From Octopus bimaculoides (lineage: Eukaryota): 38,458 nucleotides of DNA. The notes under the pieces were generated by a model. That model saw only the letters and a list, made by a program, of their open reading frames with translations. It had not been told where the DNA came from and did no database searches. Both the position numbers and the translations under genes were made by a program. Shown here in pieces: positions 11,645-28,245 of this stretch. Positions within the stretch are counted from its first letter, which is position 1. Every line of letters begins with the position of its first letter. Location: positions 128,546,062 through 128,584,519 of the forward strand of contig NC_068982.1 of NCBI RefSeq assembly GCF_001194135.2, written 5' to 3'.

Positions 11645-11979
11645 NNNNNNNNNNNNNNNNNNNNNNNNNNNNNNNNNNNNNNNNNNNNNNNNNNNNNNNN
11701 NNNNNNNNNNNNNNNNNNNNNNNNNNNNNNNNNNNNNNNNNNNNNNNNNNNNNNNNNNNNNNNNNNNNNNNNNNNNNNNNNNNNNNNNNNNNNNNNNNNN
11801 NNNNNNNNNNNNNNNNNNNNNNNNNNNNNNNNNNNNNNNNNNNNNNNNNNNNNNNNNNNNNNNNNNNNNNNNNNNNNNNNNNNNNNNNNNNNNNNNNNNN
11901 NNNNNNNNNNNNNNNNNNNNNNNNNNNNNNNNNNNNNNNNNNNNNNNNNNNNNNNNNNNNNNNNNNNNNNNNNNNNNNN
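11645..11979. other. Assembly gap (335 N) inside an intron of the Ig gene
   Basis: Run of N; could hide an exon. Confidence 1.
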
Positions 11980-12272: not shown

Positions 12273-12770
12273 CGCACGCACGCACGCACACACAAATATT
12301 ATATAGACACATACATAAATATGTGTGTGTATGTATATTATTAATGTTTGTCTTATGCCAGATTATAATAAGGCAATATTACATTAAACCAAGGAGTTAC
12401 TCAATACTTTTTGTATAGTACATATGTATTATTCTTTAACAAGAAAACAGTGATGTTGAAGTCTCAGCCTATTTCTTTTTCATACGACTGACTGTCTGAT
12501 GGAAGCTAAGCAGGCCAGAACTTCGAAGTCACTCTCAACACCATTCTTATTAAAGAATAATTATATACACATACACTTATGTATAAATGTATAAGGGATA
12601 AAAGATAAATGGTACACACACACACACACATAGTTTCAGAGAGAGAGAGAGAGAGAGAAAGAGAAGGATAGACACACATGTATACACACATACATAAATA
12701 CATGCATGTATTAATCTCAGAAGAAATTAAGCAATGTGTAGAAATAATTCCCATTTTTAACTGTACTTAC

Positions 12771-13643
12771 CTCCAATGTCAAAACTTGAAGAGGTGTTTG
12801 TAGTCCCATATTTATTTGTGGCCTTACTTGAATATGAACCAGCATCAGTTAAATCCAGATCAGTAAGAAACATTGACGAAACATTATCACTGTAAGAAAC
12901 CTTTGACCGTCGGCTTGATGTGGTTTCATTGCTACTTTTGTACCTGCTAATATCTTCATGGCTACTTTTGTACCTGGTAGTATCATCAAGGCTACTTTTG
13001 TACCTGGTAGTGTCTTCGAGGCTACTTTTGTATCTGTTGGTGTCATCCAGGCTACTTATGTACCTGCTAGTGTCATCCAGGCTACTTATGTACCTGCTAG
13101 TGTCATCCAGGCTACTTTTGTATCTGTTGGTGTCTTCAAGGCTACTTTTGTATCTGTTGGTGTCTTCAAGGCTACTTTTGTACCTGCTATTGTCGTCCAG
13201 GCTACTTAGGTACCTGCTAGTGTCATCCAGGCTACTTTTGTACCTGCTGGTGTCTTCAAGGCTACTTTTGTACCTGCTATTGTCGTCCAGGCTACTTAGG
13301 TATCTGCTAGTGTCATCCAGGCTACTTTTGTACCTGCTGGTGTCTTCGAAGCTACTTTTGTACCTGTTAGTATCATCCAGACTACTTTTGTATCTGTAAC
13401 TGTCTTCATGGCTACTTTTGTATCTGTTTACGTCTTCATGGCTACTTTTGTACCTCTTACTGTCATCGTGGCTACTTCTGTACCTGGTTATATCTTCGTG
13501 GCTACTTTTGTACTTGTTAATGTTTTCTTGGCCACTTCTGTACCTGGTAATATCTTCGTGGCTACTTTTGTACCTGTTAACATCAGAAAGAATTTGGCTT
13601 GTATAAGGACGAGATCTTTTCAAGTAATCCATGTCTGTCGTGT
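12771..13643 (-). CDS. Large coding exon (873 nt, phase 1-1): 22 x 10-aa repeats followed by strands D-G of an I-set Ig domain
   Basis: Acceptor caattcatttcag and donor GGAG|gtaagtac. Stop-free 291-codon frame ending SRRSKVSYSDNVSSMFLTDLDLTDAGSYSSKATNKYGTTNTSSSFDIG, which matches the I-set L-x-I...D-x-G-x-Y-x-C-x-A-x-N-x-x-G motif with Ser in place of Cys. Confidence 0.9.
12916..13575 (-). repeat. Coding minisatellite, 22 x 30 bp
   Basis: All 22 units are exactly 30 bp with no frameshift; plus-strand unit about gctacttttgtacctgctagtgtcatccag. Confidence 0.97.
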
Positions 13644-14318
13644 CTGAAATGAATTGGATTATATGAGAGAAGGAGGGCTGTTGAGTGAAGTTCTAACTCA
13701 ACAGGTAGGTCTCGGCAGTGGTTCCAATATAAATGTGACTTTTAGGTTTTTACTTCTTTTGCATCTAAAGCCCTCTGCCCTGAGTATTAACATTTATTTC
13801 TGATATCCTGAAGTTTATTCTGTTGGCAGCAAGTTATTAAAAATAAACTTTCAATTTACATTTATTTGTACAGATAGAGCTCCACTATTGGCTTTTGTTT
13901 TTGTTGTTTGTTTTTATTTGAAGAAAGTTTTTCCTAAGTTCAGAATGGTTGTCGAAGCTGCTCATGCCACTGCTGCTGCTGCTGCTGCTGGTCCATCTCT
14001 ACTAGCTGTGATGCTTTCTCTTGTGCTACCCACTGCTTCTAAGATATGAAAGATTGTATTCATGAAGGTGGGAGTTACCTCAGCAAGCACAAGTGGCATA
14101 TACTATTTTTTCCAAAAATCATTGGTAATGTTCAGTAAACACCCACACATACACATACTAAGTTACTATTACATAGCTACTCATATCATTAGTTAGTGTA
14201 TAAGGAGCAGCAGCAGTAGCAATGGTAGCATCTACAAGACCAGACCCAGGAATACTTATTTATAAACAGCTGATAGGTAGCTTGATTTTAAACTATATAT
14301 TTTCTCAGTTCATCTTAC

Positions 14319-17609: not shown

Positions 17610-17769
17610 GAGAAAGACACACACATGCACAACTGTTTATTCATGACTGTACAGTTGTAAAGTGAACTTCTAACCCCCATGCTTTGGGGTCCCATCATAC
17701 TGTAGAATACCTAGAGCAAATGTCTTCTACTATAGCCTCAGTGTGATAAATGCCTTGAGAGTGTGAAAT

Positions 17770-19850
17770 TCTTTAGAGAGGTTGGGATGCGATAATGTTT
17801 CTTGATGTGCGCACTGATGGCTTTTTTGTTATTGAAGAAGACAAGGTTGGCATGATGCCATTGGAGGATGTTTTCAAGGTCTCTGTTCAAGGAGTTAGTG
17901 CAGGTGTAGCATGAGGTGTATTGGTTGTATGTGTATGAAGCTTGACTATGGAAGGTTAGAGAGGAATAAAGGGTGGTGTCAATTGTGTAGGAGTGAACCT
18001 TGTTGGAGGTGATGGTAAATAATCGTTTATGTATAGAAGAAAAAGTATGACGGCTAAAATAAAACCCTGGTGCAAACCATAATTGACAGAGGGAAGGTTG
18101 CAGAATGCACTATCAGCACACACTGTAAGTGTGTGACCTGAGAGGAATACATTGATCCAAGAGATGAGGCATGAATAAAGCTGATAGGCAGGCAGTTTTT
18201 CAAATATTCATATGCCAGATATTGATGAAAGCATTGCTGATATCAAGAGCAACAATACCAGACATGGATAAATGCCTTGCTGATACTGAGAGCAATAACA
18301 CTGCTTTTATCAAACTTCTCGAGTGCAGCAGCATCCGGTGAGTAATATAGGGCAATAAGTTTCAAGTAATTATAATAAACATTAATTGTAGTTATTTAGG
18401 AGGAGAGAAATTCAAGCTGTTACAGGGTTTTTGCTAATGGCTGCCTCCATCTTTGAGATGTTTTCTATGAGTGTAATAAGACAGTAGTTGGCAGGGTCAG
18501 AGAAATTTTACTTCCAGAGAATGGAACAAGTGGTAGATTGTTACTAAAGATCACAGAGGATAACTGAAGAAGCATTATCAGCACTAGTAGCCTTTTTGAT
18601 TTGAAGTGACCAGAGTTACTTTTGTACTTTGCATGTATGTGTGTTTGGTGGTGAGCTTAGTGGAATGGAATAGAAGGGAAAGCTTTGAAGGATAATTATT
18701 TCACATGTACAGTGTTGTTTCGAATGCAAAGTTAACATTGATGCTGGAGATTTTCTCCACAAGAGTGTCGCTCACAAAACCATCATCGTTAAGAAGTGGG
18801 AGGGAAAAAAATTGCACAAAGTTGATAGAGATGTTCTTGACAATTGACCAGAAGGATTGGTTGCAGTTTAATAAGTGTGAGAGCTTATGATTGTTCAATA
18901 TATGGAAGCATTCAGCAGAGCACCTCATCTACACATACTGTAACTATGAGATCTGATAGAATGACATTGATCCAAGAGATGAGACATGAATAGAGCCTAT
19001 AGATAGATATTGATATGTGCAGAATGTAGAGAGAAATGCATAATATGATAGTTTCAGTCACCTGCTCGGCTGTTTCTGTCAAGGGTGAGGTGCATATGAT
19101 GTCAGGGATAGTTATCTTAGAAGTGGCAGAGTTCTGACCAATTAGCTAACTCAAAGTGCCACTATGTCTAGGAGGTAGTGGGAGTACTGTGTATTATGTG
19201 GACGCATGGTCAATAATAATGATAAGGCAGTGATGAGATGATTGGTTAGGTACAGAGACAGATATGATCTAGTAGAGCTTAGTTTGGAGACAAAAAAATA
19301 GATCATAGGTATTGGGAGTGACTGTATGTTGGTCAGTGATGCATGTAGGGGATGGAATGAGTTGATGTAGAGAGCAGAAGATTGCTAAAGATTTGGTTTA
19401 TGCACTGGTGGCATCAGAATAGGTGGGTGTCAGTGTTAAGGAGTGTTGTGAGTGCTGAAGTCATTGATAATGGAGACTTTGGAGTGGAGCAGGGTGAGAC
19501 AGATATCACTAATGCAAGAAGGGATAAGATATGATCTTGGTTTGAGGAGTTTGGAGAGTGGTAGAGAGGGCAAAACTATTTGAAGGAGTAGAAAAGGGAG
19601 ACTTTGAACCAAAGTAACTGGAAGTTTATAGCTAACATCAGAGGATGGAGAGAGTAAAATTTACAAATGTGCTGACACCAACTTTTGACATGAAGTTTGA
19701 GTAAAGAGTTCAATGTAGAGAGCAGAGATGGACTACAGATAGGAGTTGACTATAGATAGAGATTTGTATCTTAGGCAGGAATAGGATGTGTGGTTTGTGT
19801 GTTAGTAAGAGGTGATGATGTATGAAATGTAAGTTGAATCAGAGTCCCAA
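17770..19850 (-). mobile_element. Heavily decayed L2/CR1-superclade LINE ORF2 (APE endonuclease plus RT)
   Basis: Degenerate motifs in expected order on the minus strand: HILFLP.TQI (about 19780), INDFSTHN for GDFNxHN (about 19460), QSFWSIVKNISINF (about 18830), DPANYCLITL for NYRPISL (about 18490), GLHQGFIL for GVPQGS (about 18070), YINDY/IDTTL (about 18000). Confidence 0.75.
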
Positions 19851-20694: not shown

Positions 20695-20848
20695 AGGAGC
20701 AGGCATGGCAGTGTGATTAAGCAGCTCACTTTGCAACCATGTGATTTCAGGTTCAATCCCACCTTTGACAAGAGTCTTCTACTATAACATCAGGCCAACC
20801 AAAGCCTTAGGAGTGAATTTGATAGATGGAAACTGTGTGAAGATCTGT

Positions 20849-23420: not shown

Positions 23421-23831
23421 GTACATGCCAGTGCCGCTGGACTGGCTCCTGTACAGGTGGCATGTAAAAAACACCATTTTGAGCATGGCCGTTGCCAGTA
23501 CCGCCTGACTGGCCCTTGTGCCGGTGGCACGTAAAAGCATACATTTGTACATACATACACACACACACACATCCATCTATCTATCCATCCATACATGCAT
23601 ACATACATACAAAAACTTAATTCAAAAACTACAGATCCAATCCATCACTGGAACAGTAAAAATTTGTAAAACTTGCCAGGAGTTTATCGTTTAATTATAT
23701 ATGCGCATGTCTAGGAATGCAACTATATGCATGAGAATACATACATAAAGCAAAACAGACAAATCTGCACATATGCATACATACATACATACATACATAC
23801 ATACATACATACATACATGCATACATACATG

Positions 23832-26670: not shown

Positions 26671-27790
26671 TCAAGTGTTGAAAACATTCTGTGATTTTCT
26701 CTGGATCTCAACAATCATGTTAAAACAGCAACCTCTGAGCTGCATTTTCAGCTTGAGGGAGAAATGGCAGTCTGCAGATGCTAAATCTGACAAATAGGGC
26801 AGCTGTGGAAGCGATACCATGTTGTCCTTGGTAAGAAACTCATGAGTGAAGAGAGGTTCATGACAGGGTACATTATTGTCATGAAGAATCCAATTCTTCA
26901 TGCTCCACAAATTCGGTCGCTTTTGCTGAATGTCTTCTGTCAAATGCTTCAAAACATCAGAGTAAAATTCTCGATTGACAGTCTGTCCCTGGGGGATGAA
27001 TTCTTGAGGCACAATACTGCAGATTTCACAAAGAACAATGAGCATGCTCTTGAATGAGCTGTGGCTCTGTCATGCCTTCTTCAGTCATGAAGATGATAAG
27101 CCTCTTCCATTGTGATGACTGCTGCTTCATCTCAGGGTTGTGCCTGTGGACCCAACTCTTCTCACTGCAGATGATCCTCAACATGAAGGATGGGTCGTCA
27201 GCAGCACACTGATGGAGATCTTGACAAACTGCAATGTTCTTTCTGCTCATTGGTCAGCAGGCAGGAGACAAACTTGGCAGTGACATACCACATTCAGATG
27301 TTAGGATTGCCTGCAACAACCCATACGGTGGACCAGCAACATTAGCAATGCCATTGATTGTCCTCCAATGATCCTCATGCACAAGCTGATGAATTTTCTC
27401 CCCATTTCCAGGTCATTTCCTTGTGGCAAGTCTTCCAGACTATTCATCATCTTCCAGGGATGTTCTGCTTTTGTAGAGTCCATACCACTCAGAACATTAT
27501 GTATGACCCATTGCTTCATCGCCATAAGCTTGCCAAAACATGCTCAATGTCTCTGTAGCAGATTTCCCAAGTTTATCACAAAATTTCACGTTGGCTCTTT
27601 GTTCCAACTGCTGCCCATAACAAAATTGCAGACTACAGTATACACGTGATCACAAAAACAGAAATTTCACAACTTGCGAAGTAAACACAGTGATGTCACT
27701 TGGCACACTGCTTCATGAAGGTCACTGCTAATTCTCAATGTGCACACAACTGTGTGCTGCCATCTGTTGGCACACTACGGAGCTAGTCTA
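26671..27790 (-). pseudogene. Mariner (Tc1/mariner, probably irritans-like) transposase pseudogene, 3' end truncated
   Basis: Across frameshifts: LEQRANVKFCDKLGKSATETLSMFWQAYGDEAM; IICSEKSWVHRHNPEMKQQSSQW (first catalytic D lost); MLIVL...EFIPQGQTVN..FY..VL; WILHDNNVPCH; LPYLSDLASADCHF for PYSPDLAP.DF. Confidence 0.92.
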
Positions 27791-28005: not shown

Positions 28006-28245
28006 NNNNNNNNNNNNNNNNNNNNNNNNNNNNNNNNNNNNNNNNNNNNNNNNNNNNNNNNNNNNNNNNNNNNNNNNNNNNNNNNNNNNNNNNNNNNNNN
28101 NNNNNNNNNNNNNNNNNNNNNNNNNNNNNNNNNNNNNNNNNNNNNNNNNNNNNNNNNNNNNNNNNNNNNNNNNNNNNNNNNNNNNNNNNNNNNNNNNNNN
28201 NNNNNNNNNNNNNNNNNNNNNNNNNNNNNNNNNNNNNNNNNNNNN
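28006..28245. other. Assembly gap (240 N)
   Basis: Run of N. Confidence 1.

What the first reader, a model, noticed from the sequence alone, without database searches (positions are those of the whole stretch)
12916..13575. 22-fold RYKSSLDDTS decapeptide array: a candidate multisite phospho-switch or spring in an Ig protein
Seen: 22 exact 30-bp units with no frameshift. Tyr2 and Ser4 are invariant, Arg1 is present in 21 of 22, and a basic half is followed by an acidic half. Central units are homogenised, with a 90-bp higher-order duplication (units 8-10 versus 11-13), while edge units diverge. Knowledge: R-x-x-S fits the CaMKII/PKA-type basophilic consensus and S-x-x-D/E fits CK2, so nearly every unit carries both. 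Inference: a disordered polyampholyte whose charge or stiffness is tuned by phosphorylation, analogous in role (not sequence) to titin PEVK or the Pol II CTD. I do not recognise this repeat from any described family.
Basis: partly seen in the sequence, partly recalled or inferred. Interest (0 to 1): 0.85.

Follow-up and report, generated by a model that had tools for sequence, protein, structure and literature searches.

The report
Lineage-specific decapeptide repeat in titin-like gene
This is a real, in-frame 22-copy repeat of ten amino acids that one cephalopod lineage gained by amplifying a 30-base piece at an isoform junction of a titin/twitchin-like kinase-immunoglobulin gene; it adds a probably disordered serine/tyrosine/arginine/aspartate-rich stretch whose function has not been tested.

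Summary
Window 12916-13575 (minus strand) holds 22 gap-free 30-bp units encoding RYKSS[L/H][D/E]D.., and it is the only one of six frames open through the region.

- **Expression context.** The array lies in a verified exon chain (13632-12771, 11057-11012, 5353-5238, 716-513). That chain translates exactly to residues 1-409 of an unnamed public gene model (UniParc UPI000695A3C9).
- **Relatives.** Cephalopod transcripts and three gastropod 'titin-like' proteins are colinear but have no array. The five cephalopod short forms carry one copy (RYKDGDE[LVI]I.), which is strand C/C' of an I-set Ig domain.
- **Two isoforms.** In cuttlefish the gene makes a long Ig-Fn3-kinase-tail-Ig form and a kinase-less short form. 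They diverge exactly at ...TG|G TAC AAA (Trp) versus ...cag|G TAC AAA (Arg). The window's array starts at that junction, 19 codons after the short form's ATG.
- **Origin.** It is a lineage-specific coding minisatellite derived from a splice-acceptor/Ig-strand segment. It is not a known repeat family.
- **Constraint.** Coding constraint is moderate (pN/pS 0.39; permutation p about 0.01-0.02).
A disordered, phosphorylatable polyampholyte remains plausible but untested. The 'spring' idea fits poorly, because the array sits at the short form's N-terminus or in an Ig loop.

Interest is moderate.

The parts
12916..13575 (-). 22 x 30-bp tandem array encoding RYKSS[L/H][D/E]D[T..][S/N/T]; residues 20-239 of the short isoform
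   Evidence: 100% identical to public gene model P0154
13576..13632 (-). Start codon (13630-13632) and 19-codon leader MDYLKRSRPYTSQILSDVN of the kinase-less isoform. Its last bases, ttctttctgatgttaacAG|G, are the conserved 3' splice site used by the long isoform in relatives
   Evidence: leader conserved as M[DE]YL[KR]R.R....[QL][IL][LF].D[LV].R in six cephalopod transcripts; in-frame TAG at 13693-13695; junction comparison
13633..14015 (-). 5' untranslated leader of the short isoform, contiguous with the genome (no splice at the tttcag near 13644); the 5' limit and the promoter are not determined
   Evidence: colinear conserved blocks with transcripts L003 and L008 at 14015-13957, 13917-13896 and 13710-13688
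13940..13996 (-). Conserved upstream ORF MDQQQQQQQWHEQLRQPF* in the leader
   Evidence: L003 has MDQQQYEELRQQQPS*, L008 has MDQQQHEELRQQQPS*
12771..12915 (-). Remainder of the first coding exon: SRRSKVSYSDNVSSMFLTDLDLTDAGSYSSKATNKYGTTNTSSSFDIG, which is strands C'/D-G of an I-set Ig domain (F-strand Cys is Ser); donor G|GTAAGT at 12765-12770, phase 1
   Evidence: Pfam I-set 28-30 bits against a cut-off of 23.7, profile positions 32/35-88 only; alignment to relatives
11012..11057 (-). 46-nt mini-exon (phase 1 to 2) encoding (E)VRHRRKKKEDLDTE(T), the linker between Ig domains
   Evidence: ttttcag|AA...AC|gtaata; colinear with relatives; required to reproduce P0154
5238..5353 (-). 116-nt exon (phase 2 to 1): RFITYDGTQVDPLSPPVILLPLVDEYRSIGESVTFSIT, a linker plus strands A-B of the next I-set domain
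   Evidence: adding the A-B strands raises the I-set score from 51.8 to 86.3 bits
513..716 (-). 204-nt exon (phase 1-1): strands C-G of that I-set domain
16..193 (-). Interspersed-repeat-derived 'exon' (KFLQLDALPNANHSE...) included in the public gene model but absent from every relative; doubtful
   Evidence: similar copies elsewhere in the window

Best explanation
Shown: the array is a lineage-specific, in-frame amplification of one 30-bp segment of a cephalopod titin/twitchin/obscurin-like kinase-Ig gene. In relatives the segment is single-copy. It consists of the last bases of a 3' splice site (AG) plus the first nine codons of the shared exon, (R/W)-YKDGDEII-P, which is strand C/C' of the I-set domain that follows the kinase's regulatory tail. 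The gene makes two products. The long form is Ig-Ig-Fn3-kinase-tail-Ig-Ig(n). The kinase-less short form starts from its own leader inside the preceding intron and reads through the acceptor, so the Trp codon TG|G becomes the Arg codon AGG. In this window the short form's ATG is at 13632 and the array supplies residues 20-239. It is followed by a truncated Ig (strands C'/D-G) and then intact Ig domains.

Inferred: the 220 residues form a disordered, net-neutral, Ser-rich polyampholyte with 22 evenly spaced Arg-Tyr pairs. The mechanism I think most likely is a flexible, multivalent N-terminal interaction module. The Arg/Tyr pairs would act as 'stickers' separated by Ser/Thr/Asp spacers, and Ser phosphorylation (R-x-x-S and S-x-x-D/E in nearly every unit) could change its charge and so its binding. 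I do not think it acts as a series-elastic spring. If the long isoform uses the only acceptor with a pyrimidine tract (unit 1), the same array would sit as a 210-residue loop between strands C and C' of that Ig domain. Confidence is about 0.85 for the anatomy and origin and about 0.3 for the functional part.
For: Array and frame. The exon chain reproduces residues 1-409 of public model P0154 exactly. No array in any relative: cephalopod short forms P0043, P0151, P0153, P0265 and P0268 have one RYKDGDE.I. copy, long forms P0152 and P0257 have WYKDGDEIIP, and gastropod P0155, P0078 and P0156 have an unamplified L[KN][DN]GE... segment. These relatives lie on 3-4 kb intron-free contigs and so are transcripts. 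Two isoforms of one gene: L001 and L008 are 98.8% identical for about 2.9 kb from the junction and unrelated upstream (16/60), breaking at acatg|GTACAAAG versus ctttacag|GTACAAAG; the same acceptor-like sequence is in all short forms and in the window. Long-form architecture: Pkinase 242 bits, fn3, 10 I-set stretches. The kinase end, tail and Ig align through twitchin 1koa/3uto and titin kinase 6ygn. Own leader: stops in all frames, conserved uORF, colinear with the window's genome. Coding constraint: pN/pS 0.39; genealogy-preserving permutation 2.0%, and 0.7% with no stop; no indels. Edge units keep ancestral residues (G5, E7, I9), which suggests an older periphery and a homogenised core. Disorder-type composition and no confident fold. 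Only unit 1 has a pyrimidine tract, 11/18 against 6-9/18. The cuttlefish long form has a second region of nearly the same composition with 21 [RK]Y pairs, so this sequence style recurs in the family.
Against: No RNA or protein data exist for this species, so inclusion of all 22 units in mRNA rests on an unnamed gene model plus orthologous transcripts that lack the array. Constraint is only moderate; five of ten positions vary freely; one antisense frame gives a similar pN/pS of 0.40. The 5' half of the unit is invariant even at synonymous sites (TAC 22/22, AGT 22/22), which could reflect recent homogenisation or an RNA-level constraint and not peptide selection. The isoform pair is demonstrated in cuttlefish, not in the window's species, and no kinase or A-B-C-strand exon lies in the 25 kb upstream. 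The unit's exact breakpoints cannot be fixed: a unit drawn wholly from the exon, with a 3-bp loss, is possible. Phosphorylation, disorder and multivalent binding are inferences from composition. AlphaFold was run without an alignment.
Confidence: 0.6

Rival explanations
1. Tolerated coding minisatellite with no function of its own. Replication slippage or unequal exchange expanded a 30-bp segment in a part of the short isoform that is already structurally dispensable (the N-terminal remnant of an Ig domain that lacks strands A-C). Selection only removes frameshifts and stops.
For: Absent from all eight relatives examined. It lies in a half-domain that cannot fold alone (I-set profile 32/35-88 only). 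Half of the positions vary freely; synonymous variants number only 8 of 29 against about 5 expected. Being stop-free is not surprising if units are not independent (P = 0.2-0.37). The homogenised centre and the 90-bp higher-order duplicate point to ongoing turnover.
Against: pN/pS of 0.39 is reached in only 2% of genealogy-preserving permutations. R, Y, S, S and D are kept in units that differ at up to 14 of 30 bases. There are no indels at 17% divergence. A region of the same composition exists independently in the cuttlefish long form.
Confidence: 0.3
2. One reading: a phosphorylation-tuned entropic spring in series with Ig domains, like titin's PEVK segment.
For: The gene belongs to the titin/twitchin-type group. 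The array is charged, low-complexity and probably disordered. R-x-x-S and S-x-x-D/E occur in nearly every unit.
Against: In the short isoform the array begins at residue 20, so nothing known anchors its N-terminal side. In the long isoform it would be an intra-domain loop between strands C and C'. It contains no Pro and almost no Val, unlike PEVK. Relatives do without it.
Confidence: 0.1
3. RNA-level role. The array multiplies a 3' splice site (AG|G TAC AAA...) 22-fold and so acts on isoform choice. It could offer alternative acceptors to the kinase-linked transcript; six units begin AGA, which would create TG|A, a stop. It could also offer in-frame cryptic splice sites (each unit also reads cAG|GTAC).
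For: The array begins at the conserved acceptor and every unit keeps AG(G/A)TAC. The 5' half of the unit is invariant at synonymous sites.
Against: Only unit 1 has a pyrimidine tract. GTACAA is a poor donor (established splice-site consensus). No transcript data exist for this species. The frame is preserved, which an RNA-only role would not require.
Confidence: 0.08
4. Not expressed in this species: the exon with the array is a decaying relic kept in a computational gene model.
For: There is no transcript evidence for the array itself. The same model includes a doubtful repeat-derived exon at 16-193. No exact ORF is on record in assemblies.
Against: The 311-codon frame is open with an intact ATG, donor site, conserved leader and uORF. 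Downstream exons are intact. Orthologous short-form transcripts are found in at least five cephalopod assemblies.
Confidence: 0.04

Closest known systems
Telokin (kinase-related protein) from the MYLK gene
   Same: A kinase-less product made from the 3' part of a CaMK-group kinase-Ig gene by an independent start inside the gene. In mouse, 220 kDa MLCK, 130 kDa smMLCK and 17 kDa telokin come from independent promoters, with telokin from the last three exons (PMC9343278). Here the short form has its own 5' leader with a conserved uORF and shares everything 3' of one junction with the kinase form.
   Different: Telokin is a complete single Ig domain of about 17 kDa. This product starts inside an Ig domain (after strand C), continues through 6 or more further Ig domains (825 aa or more), and in this lineage carries the 220-residue array. 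Promoter activity was not tested. The kinase type is unresolved: the kinase-end peptide scores DAPK > twitchin > CaMK1 > MYLK4 > titin.
Low-complexity inserts of titin-family proteins (titin PEVK; the S/Y/R/D-rich x-D-[RK]-Y-S region of the cuttlefish long form P0257, residues about 1661-1810)
   Same: Tandem short units giving a disordered stretch inside a titin-like Ig protein. The cuttlefish region has almost the same composition (S 20%, Y 14%, R 12%, D 12%) as the array (S 25%, D 14%, R 10.5%, Y 10.5%) and 21 [RK]Y pairs.
   Different: PEVK is Pro/Glu/Val/Lys-rich and lies between tethered Ig segments. The array has no Pro, lies at an N-terminus or in a loop, and has a different origin (an Ig strand). 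The cuttlefish region is a pentapeptide repeat at another place in the protein, so the two are similar in style and not homologous in position.
RNA polymerase II CTD heptads and other multisite phospho-repeats (for example KSP repeats)
   Same: Many tandem copies of a short Tyr/Ser-containing unit that could be phosphorylated at multiple sites.
   Different: There is no sequence similarity (YSPTSPS against RYKSSLDDTS; no Ser-Pro sites), the protein context differs, and there is no evidence of phosphorylation. The resemblance is recalled from general knowledge and was not tested.
Coding minisatellites (VNTR-type repeat expansions in exons)
   Same: A 30-bp unit, in-frame, with a homogenised centre and diverged edges, a higher-order 90-bp duplicate, and lineage specificity.
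   Different: Here the amplified unit can be traced to a specific structural element (Ig strand C/C') and, on the most parsimonious reading, spans a splice acceptor used for isoform switching.

Membership tests
Immunoglobulin I-set domain (Pfam PF07679) | Profile match above Pfam's gathering score | tested here: met
   The exon tail scores 28.3-30.3 bits against a cut-off of 23.7. The next domain scores 86.3 bits once spliced. The gene model has six I-set stretches.
Immunoglobulin I-set domain (Pfam PF07679) | A complete domain (strands A-G) with the C-strand Trp and the B/F-strand Cys pair | tested here: not met
   For the array-bearing domain in the short isoform, only profile positions 32/35-88 are present. 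Trp is replaced by Arg (AGG from the retained acceptor) and the F-strand Cys is Ser (GSYSSKA). In the cuttlefish long isoform the domain is complete.
Titin/twitchin/MLCK-type kinase-Ig genes | A CaMK-group protein kinase domain followed by a regulatory tail and an Ig domain, within arrays of Ig/Fn3 domains | tested here: met
   Met for the cuttlefish orthologue P0257: Pkinase 242 bits, fn3 36 bits, 10 I-set stretches. The kinase end, tail and Ig align through twitchin 1koa/3uto and titin 6ygn. Gastropod orthologues are named titin or titin-like by NCBI.
Titin/twitchin/MLCK-type kinase-Ig genes | Kinase exons present at this locus in this species | not testable with these tools
   No kinase or A-B-C-strand exon lies in 13693-38458. 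The cuttlefish gene spans about 177 kb, so they may lie outside the window.
Telokin-like independent product | A separate transcript with its own 5' end that shares the 3' exons with the kinase form | tested here: met
   L008 against L001: 98.8% identical from the junction on, unrelated upstream. The leaders have stops in all frames and a conserved uORF. The window's leader is colinear with them.
Telokin-like independent product | The product equals the single C-terminal Ig domain of MLCK (about 17 kDa), driven by an intronic promoter | tested here: not met
   The product starts mid-domain and is 825 aa or more with 6 or more Ig domains. Promoter activity cannot be tested here.
Titin PEVK-type spring | Pro/Glu/Val/Lys-rich composition; placed in series between tethered Ig segments | tested here: not met
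   P 0%, V 0.5%, E 5.5%, K 8%. The array begins at residue 20 of the short form.
Any curated repeat family (Pfam-A) | A match at or above the gathering score | tested here: not met
   The best matches are Extensin_1 at 19.7 bits against 105, and the Spt5 CTD repeat at 14.4 against 25.4. The period-10 hits in the exhaustive search are unrelated repeats.
Multisite phosphorylation module | Demonstrated phosphorylation of the repeated sites | not testable with these tools
   Only motif counts are available: R-x-x-[ST] 21, [ST]-x-x-[DE] 42, S-x-E 11, no [RK][RK]-x-[ST], no [ST]-P.

The most novel reading that the evidence does not exclude
The array is a newly evolved regulatory head on a telokin-like, kinase-less filament-binding protein. 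Its 22 evenly spaced Arg-Tyr 'stickers' would drive multivalent self-association or binding to filaments, and phosphorylation of the paired serines (possibly by the gene's own kinase isoform or by PKA/CaMKII/CK2) would switch this off. That would give one cephalopod lineage a graded control of muscle filament interactions. Independent gain of the same S/Y/R/D sequence style elsewhere in the cuttlefish protein would then be convergent evidence for that function.
Probability: 0.12. Interest if true: 0.65.

Novelty: new variant of a known kind. Interest (0 to 1): 0.42.

Why it matters
It is a clean, datable example of how a new disordered protein segment is born. A 30-bp piece that encodes a beta-strand of an Ig domain, and on the most parsimonious reading also contains a splice acceptor, was amplified 22-fold and kept in frame. 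That turned folded-domain sequence into a low-complexity Ser/Tyr/Arg/Asp repeat at the head of an alternative isoform. The work also shows that cephalopod and gastropod titin-like kinase genes make a kinase-less Ig product, recalling telokin from MYLK. If the array proves to be functional and phosphorylated, it would be a lineage-specific regulator of a muscle-type Ig protein. If it does not, it remains a useful case of a tolerated coding minisatellite. Either way it does not open a major unsolved question, so interest is moderate.

Tried and rejected
1. I first treated the repeat exon as an internal phase 1-1 exon starting at tttcag|AC (13643). I rejected this: the 5' leader of orthologous transcripts is colinear with the genome further upstream.
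2. I first spliced the repeat exon directly to an acceptor at 5303. That join is in frame, but the orthologues and P0154 show a 46-nt mini-exon and an acceptor at 5353 instead.
3. I searched for an exon carrying Ig strands A-B (or A-C) upstream of the array by splice-phase enumeration, motif scans and tblastn with paralogous and orthologous peptides. Nothing credible turned up. LVEKISSINVNFAFETT (18710-18763) lies in a reverse-transcriptase-like element, and KTLVKGGIEPEITW (20728-20778) looks like an interspersed repeat.
4. The word-indexed protein searches with the repeat exon and with the next Ig exon found nothing, although P0154 contains both. Those null results are therefore unreliable, and I did not use them as evidence of absence.
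5. Exact-ORF look-ups found nothing.
6. The repeat-only hits of the exhaustive search (P0081 ISRYFKIFQD, P0092 GDVSRGNESL, P0116 RLEDTQRHCG, P0139, P0096, P0126) are unrelated period-10 repeats.
7. The metagenome scan by peptide patterns found no relative. The DNA-pattern scan found one contig, L007, a microbial APAPDTKVAP repeat that shares a 15-mer in another frame.
8. Single-sequence AlphaFold gave a model too poor for fold search.
9. I considered a pentapeptide-repeat solenoid, a coiled coil and a single alpha-helix. The Tyr2-Leu6 spacing of 4/6, the 10-residue period and 33% Ser/Thr do not fit them. This rests on reasoning from sequence only.
10. Literature searches for the motif and for decapeptide repeats in mollusc Ig proteins found nothing relevant.
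Full report
**1. The observation**

Tandem Repeats Finder reports one array at 12931-13576 with period 30, 21.5 copies, 83% matches and no indels. The coding sense is the minus strand. Read from 13575 down to 12916, it gives 22 complete ten-codon units of consensus RYKSSLEDTS.

- Tyr2 and Ser4 are invariant. Arg1 is 21/22, Ser5 is 21/22 and Asp8 is 20/22.
- Positions 3, 6, 7, 9 and 10 vary.
- Units 8-10 and 11-13 match at 87 of 90 bases, and central units are more alike than edge units.

Only one of six frames is open through the region, for 311 codons at 12760-13692.

**2. Is it coding?**

The array's freedom from stops is weak evidence on its own. P is 0.02 if the units mutated independently, and 0.2-0.37 if shared variants count once. 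Stronger points are these:

- The 91 flanking non-repeat codons are also open (P about 0.005 at this window's stop density).
- The 3' flank matches the Pfam I-set domain above threshold (28-30 bits against 23.7).
- There are no indels at 17% divergence.
- Among the units pN/pS is 0.39. When whole column patterns are permuted among the 30 sites, which keeps the units' genealogy, only 2.0% of trials reach so low a ratio, and only 0.7% do so without a stop.

Constraint is therefore real but moderate. One antisense frame gives 0.40. The 5' half of the unit (AGG TAC AAA AGT AGC) hardly varies even at synonymous sites, so homogenisation or an RNA-level constraint may contribute.

**3. Gene structure in the window (minus strand)**

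| Feature | Coordinates | Notes |
|---|---|---|
| First coding exon | 13632 (ATG) to 12771 | donor G\|GTAAGT, phase 1 |
| Mini-exon | 11057-11012 | 46 nt, ttttcag\|AA...AC\|gtaata, phase 1 to 2 |
| Exon | 5353-5238 | ttccacag\|G..., phase 2 to 1; linker plus Ig strands A-B |
| Exon | 716-513 | phase 1-1; strands C-G |

Concatenated, these exons translate to exactly residues 1-409 of P0154, an unnamed 939-residue public model (UniParc UPI000695A3C9) that contains all 22 units. Two of my earlier guesses were wrong and are corrected here: an acceptor at 13643 and a direct join to 5303.

**4. Relatives and the origin of the unit**

The exhaustive HMMER search and a follow-up search found relatives at two distances:

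- Cephalopod relatives at 57-60% identity: P0043, P0151, P0152, P0153, P0265 and P0268, plus the *Acanthosepion pharaonis* genome models P0257-P0259.
- Gastropod proteins at about 35% identity, named 'titin' or 'titin-like' by NCBI: P0155, P0078 and P0156.

The cephalopod ones lie on 3-4 kb contigs that are intron-free over more than 820 codons, so they are transcripts. All are colinear with the window's protein once the array is collapsed to its last unit:

- Window: MDYLKRSRPYTSQILSDVN-RYKSSNETTS-SRRSKVSYSDNVSSMFLTDLDLTDAGSYSSKATNKYG
- Relative: MEYLRRHRHNMNQLLSDLY-RYKDGDEIIP-SRRTRLSYEDGVSSLFSSDLNLSDAGSYSCKAVNKFG

No relative has an array; the cephalopod short forms have a single ten-residue copy. 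The edge units of the array (RYKSSHEDIT, RYRSGQENIN) keep ancestral residues (G5, E7, I9) that the homogenised central units have lost. In I-set terms the segment is strand C/C' (W-y-K-D-G-x-x-l).

**5. Two isoforms and the junction**

The cuttlefish long form (P0257, 2,655 residues, gene span about 177 kb) has this architecture: Ig-Ig-Fn3-protein kinase-regulatory tail-Ig-Ig(n)-low-complexity region-Ig. Its kinase end, tail and following Ig align through the corresponding parts of twitchin (1koa, 3uto) and titin kinase (6ygn). The kinase-end peptide alone scores DAPK > twitchin > CaMK1 > MYLK4 > titin, so the exact kinase family is unresolved.

Transcript L001 carries the kinase form (...KPEPKITW-YKDGDEIIP). 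Transcript L008 carries the short form (MEYLRRHRYNMNQLLTDLYR-YKDGDEIIP). The two are 98.8% identical for about 2.9 kb from the junction and unrelated upstream (16/60). The break falls at ...attacatg|GTACAAAG against ...ctgatctttacag|GTACAAAG.

The short form's upstream bases are a textbook 3' splice site, conserved in all short forms and in the window (ttctttctgatgttaacag|GTACAAAAGT). So the Arg codon AGG of 'R-Y-K' is the retained acceptor AG plus the G that completes Trp (TG|G) in the long form.

The short form has a leader of its own:

- It has stops in all frames and no Ig or kinase coding.
- It carries a conserved upstream ORF: window 13940-13996 MDQQQQQQQWHEQLRQPF*, L003 MDQQQYEELRQQQPS*, L008 MDQQQHEELRQQQPS*.
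- It has blocks colinear with the window's genome up to at least 14015.

This recalls telokin, which is made from the 3' end of MYLK by an independent internal promoter (PMC9343278). It differs in that the product here starts inside an Ig domain and is far larger.

**6. What the array is**

It begins exactly at that junction, 19 codons after the short form's ATG. The most parsimonious amplified segment is the 30 bp from AGG to the codon before 'SRR', which spans the acceptor. A unit drawn wholly from the exon, with a 3-bp loss, cannot be excluded.

Only unit 1 is preceded by a pyrimidine tract (11/18 against 6-9/18). A long isoform in this species would therefore probably splice to unit 1 and carry the whole array as a loop between strands C and C'. 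Whether such an isoform exists here is unknown: no kinase or A-C-strand exon lies in the 25 kb upstream.

**7. Likely working**

- **Composition.** S 25%, D 14%, R 10.5%, Y 10.5%, K 8%, T 8%. The fraction of charged residues is 0.38, net charge is about 0, and mean hydropathy is 0.31 against a boundary of 0.415.
- **Fold.** AlphaFold without an alignment gives pLDDT 30-50 over the array. This is consistent with disorder but does not prove it.
- **Phosphorylation motifs.** Nearly every unit has R-x-x-S (21) and two S-x-x-D/E (42). There are no strict PKA sites and no Ser-Pro sites.
- **The spring reading.** It is weak because of where the array sits: at the N-terminus of the short form, or in an intra-domain loop of the long form.
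- **My preferred reading (inference, about 0.3).** It is a flexible multivalent head with evenly spaced Arg-Tyr pairs whose interactions could be tuned by Ser phosphorylation.
- **The main rival (about 0.3).** It is a tolerated coding minisatellite.

One suggestive side observation: the cuttlefish long form has, elsewhere in the protein, about 150 residues of almost the same composition. They are built from x-D-[RK]-Y-S pentapeptides with 21 [RK]Y pairs.

**8. Novelty**

The repeat matches no Pfam family and no paper in the library. The period-10 proteins found by HMMER are unrelated. The sequence itself is already public in an unnamed gene model.

It belongs to a known kind: an exonic minisatellite producing a low-complexity segment in a titin-like protein. 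Its traceable origin is unusual: an Ig strand at an isoform junction. I therefore rate it a new variant of a known kind, of moderate interest.

**9. Limits**

- The organism is not identified. It is cephalopod-like by similarity, and probably not a decapodiform given 57-60% identity to the cuttlefish cluster; this is inference.
- No expression data for the array were available.
- The word-indexed searches missed the locus's own protein (against 36), so negative results from that tool carry little weight.

Noticed in passing
window 16-193 (minus strand): The public gene model P0154 inserts 60 in-frame residues (KFLQLDALPNANHSESVVGAFTCH...) between two Ig domains. They come from an interspersed repeat with other copies at about 3569-3721, 4121-4237 and 23449-23538, and they are absent from every relative, which reads TV[HY]-NYTLE.... 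This is probably an annotation artefact or a recent exonisation.
   Followed up: partly
window 13940-13996 (minus strand); L003 about 139-186; L008 5' leader: There is a short upstream ORF in the short isoform's leader: MDQQQQQQQWHEQLRQPF* in the window, MDQQQYEELRQQQPS* in L003 and MDQQQHEELRQQQPS* in L008. It is conserved between this window and two other cephalopod transcripts, which suggests translational control.
   Followed up: partly
P0257 residues about 1661-1810 (cuttlefish long isoform): A second Ser/Tyr/Arg/Asp-rich repeat region (...DRYSTDKYSADRYATDKYSADRYS...) built from x-D-[RK]-Y-S pentapeptides, with 21 [RK]Y pairs. Its composition nearly matches the window's array, but it lies at a different place in the protein. 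Whether the window's species has it lies outside the window.
   Followed up: partly
L001 2890-2920; L002, L003, L006 and L008 at their stop codons: All five cephalopod transcripts end their reading frame at ...SGDSDIRW* with the DNA ...AGA TG|GTGAGTT.... The stop (TGG TGA) arises by reading into an unspliced GTGAGT donor that splits a C-strand Trp codon. The genome model continues W-LKDGEVIY. A conserved 3'UTR follows. So the roughly 825-residue products end by intronic termination at the same kind of intra-Ig intron at which the short form starts.
   Followed up: partly
window 26674-27253 (minus), 17741-19660 (minus), 4826-5134 (minus): Transposable-element remnants: a mariner/Tc1-like transposase fragment and reverse-transcriptase-like open frames (YINDYLPS...). 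There are many micro- and minisatellites (80 TRF rows) and three assembly gaps (2272-2359, 11645-11979, 28006-28245).
   Followed up: no
L007 415-517 (metagenome contig Ga0181349_1043354): An unrelated microbial 30-bp coding repeat (APAPDTKVAP) shares the 15-mer AGATACAAAAGTAGC with the window's unit in a different frame. This is a coincidence that a two-unit DNA pattern cannot exclude.
   Followed up: yes
The word-indexed protein search returned nothing for two queries that are contained verbatim in P0154, a protein it later listed. Null results from it should not be read as absence, at least for repetitive or short queries.
   Followed up: partly
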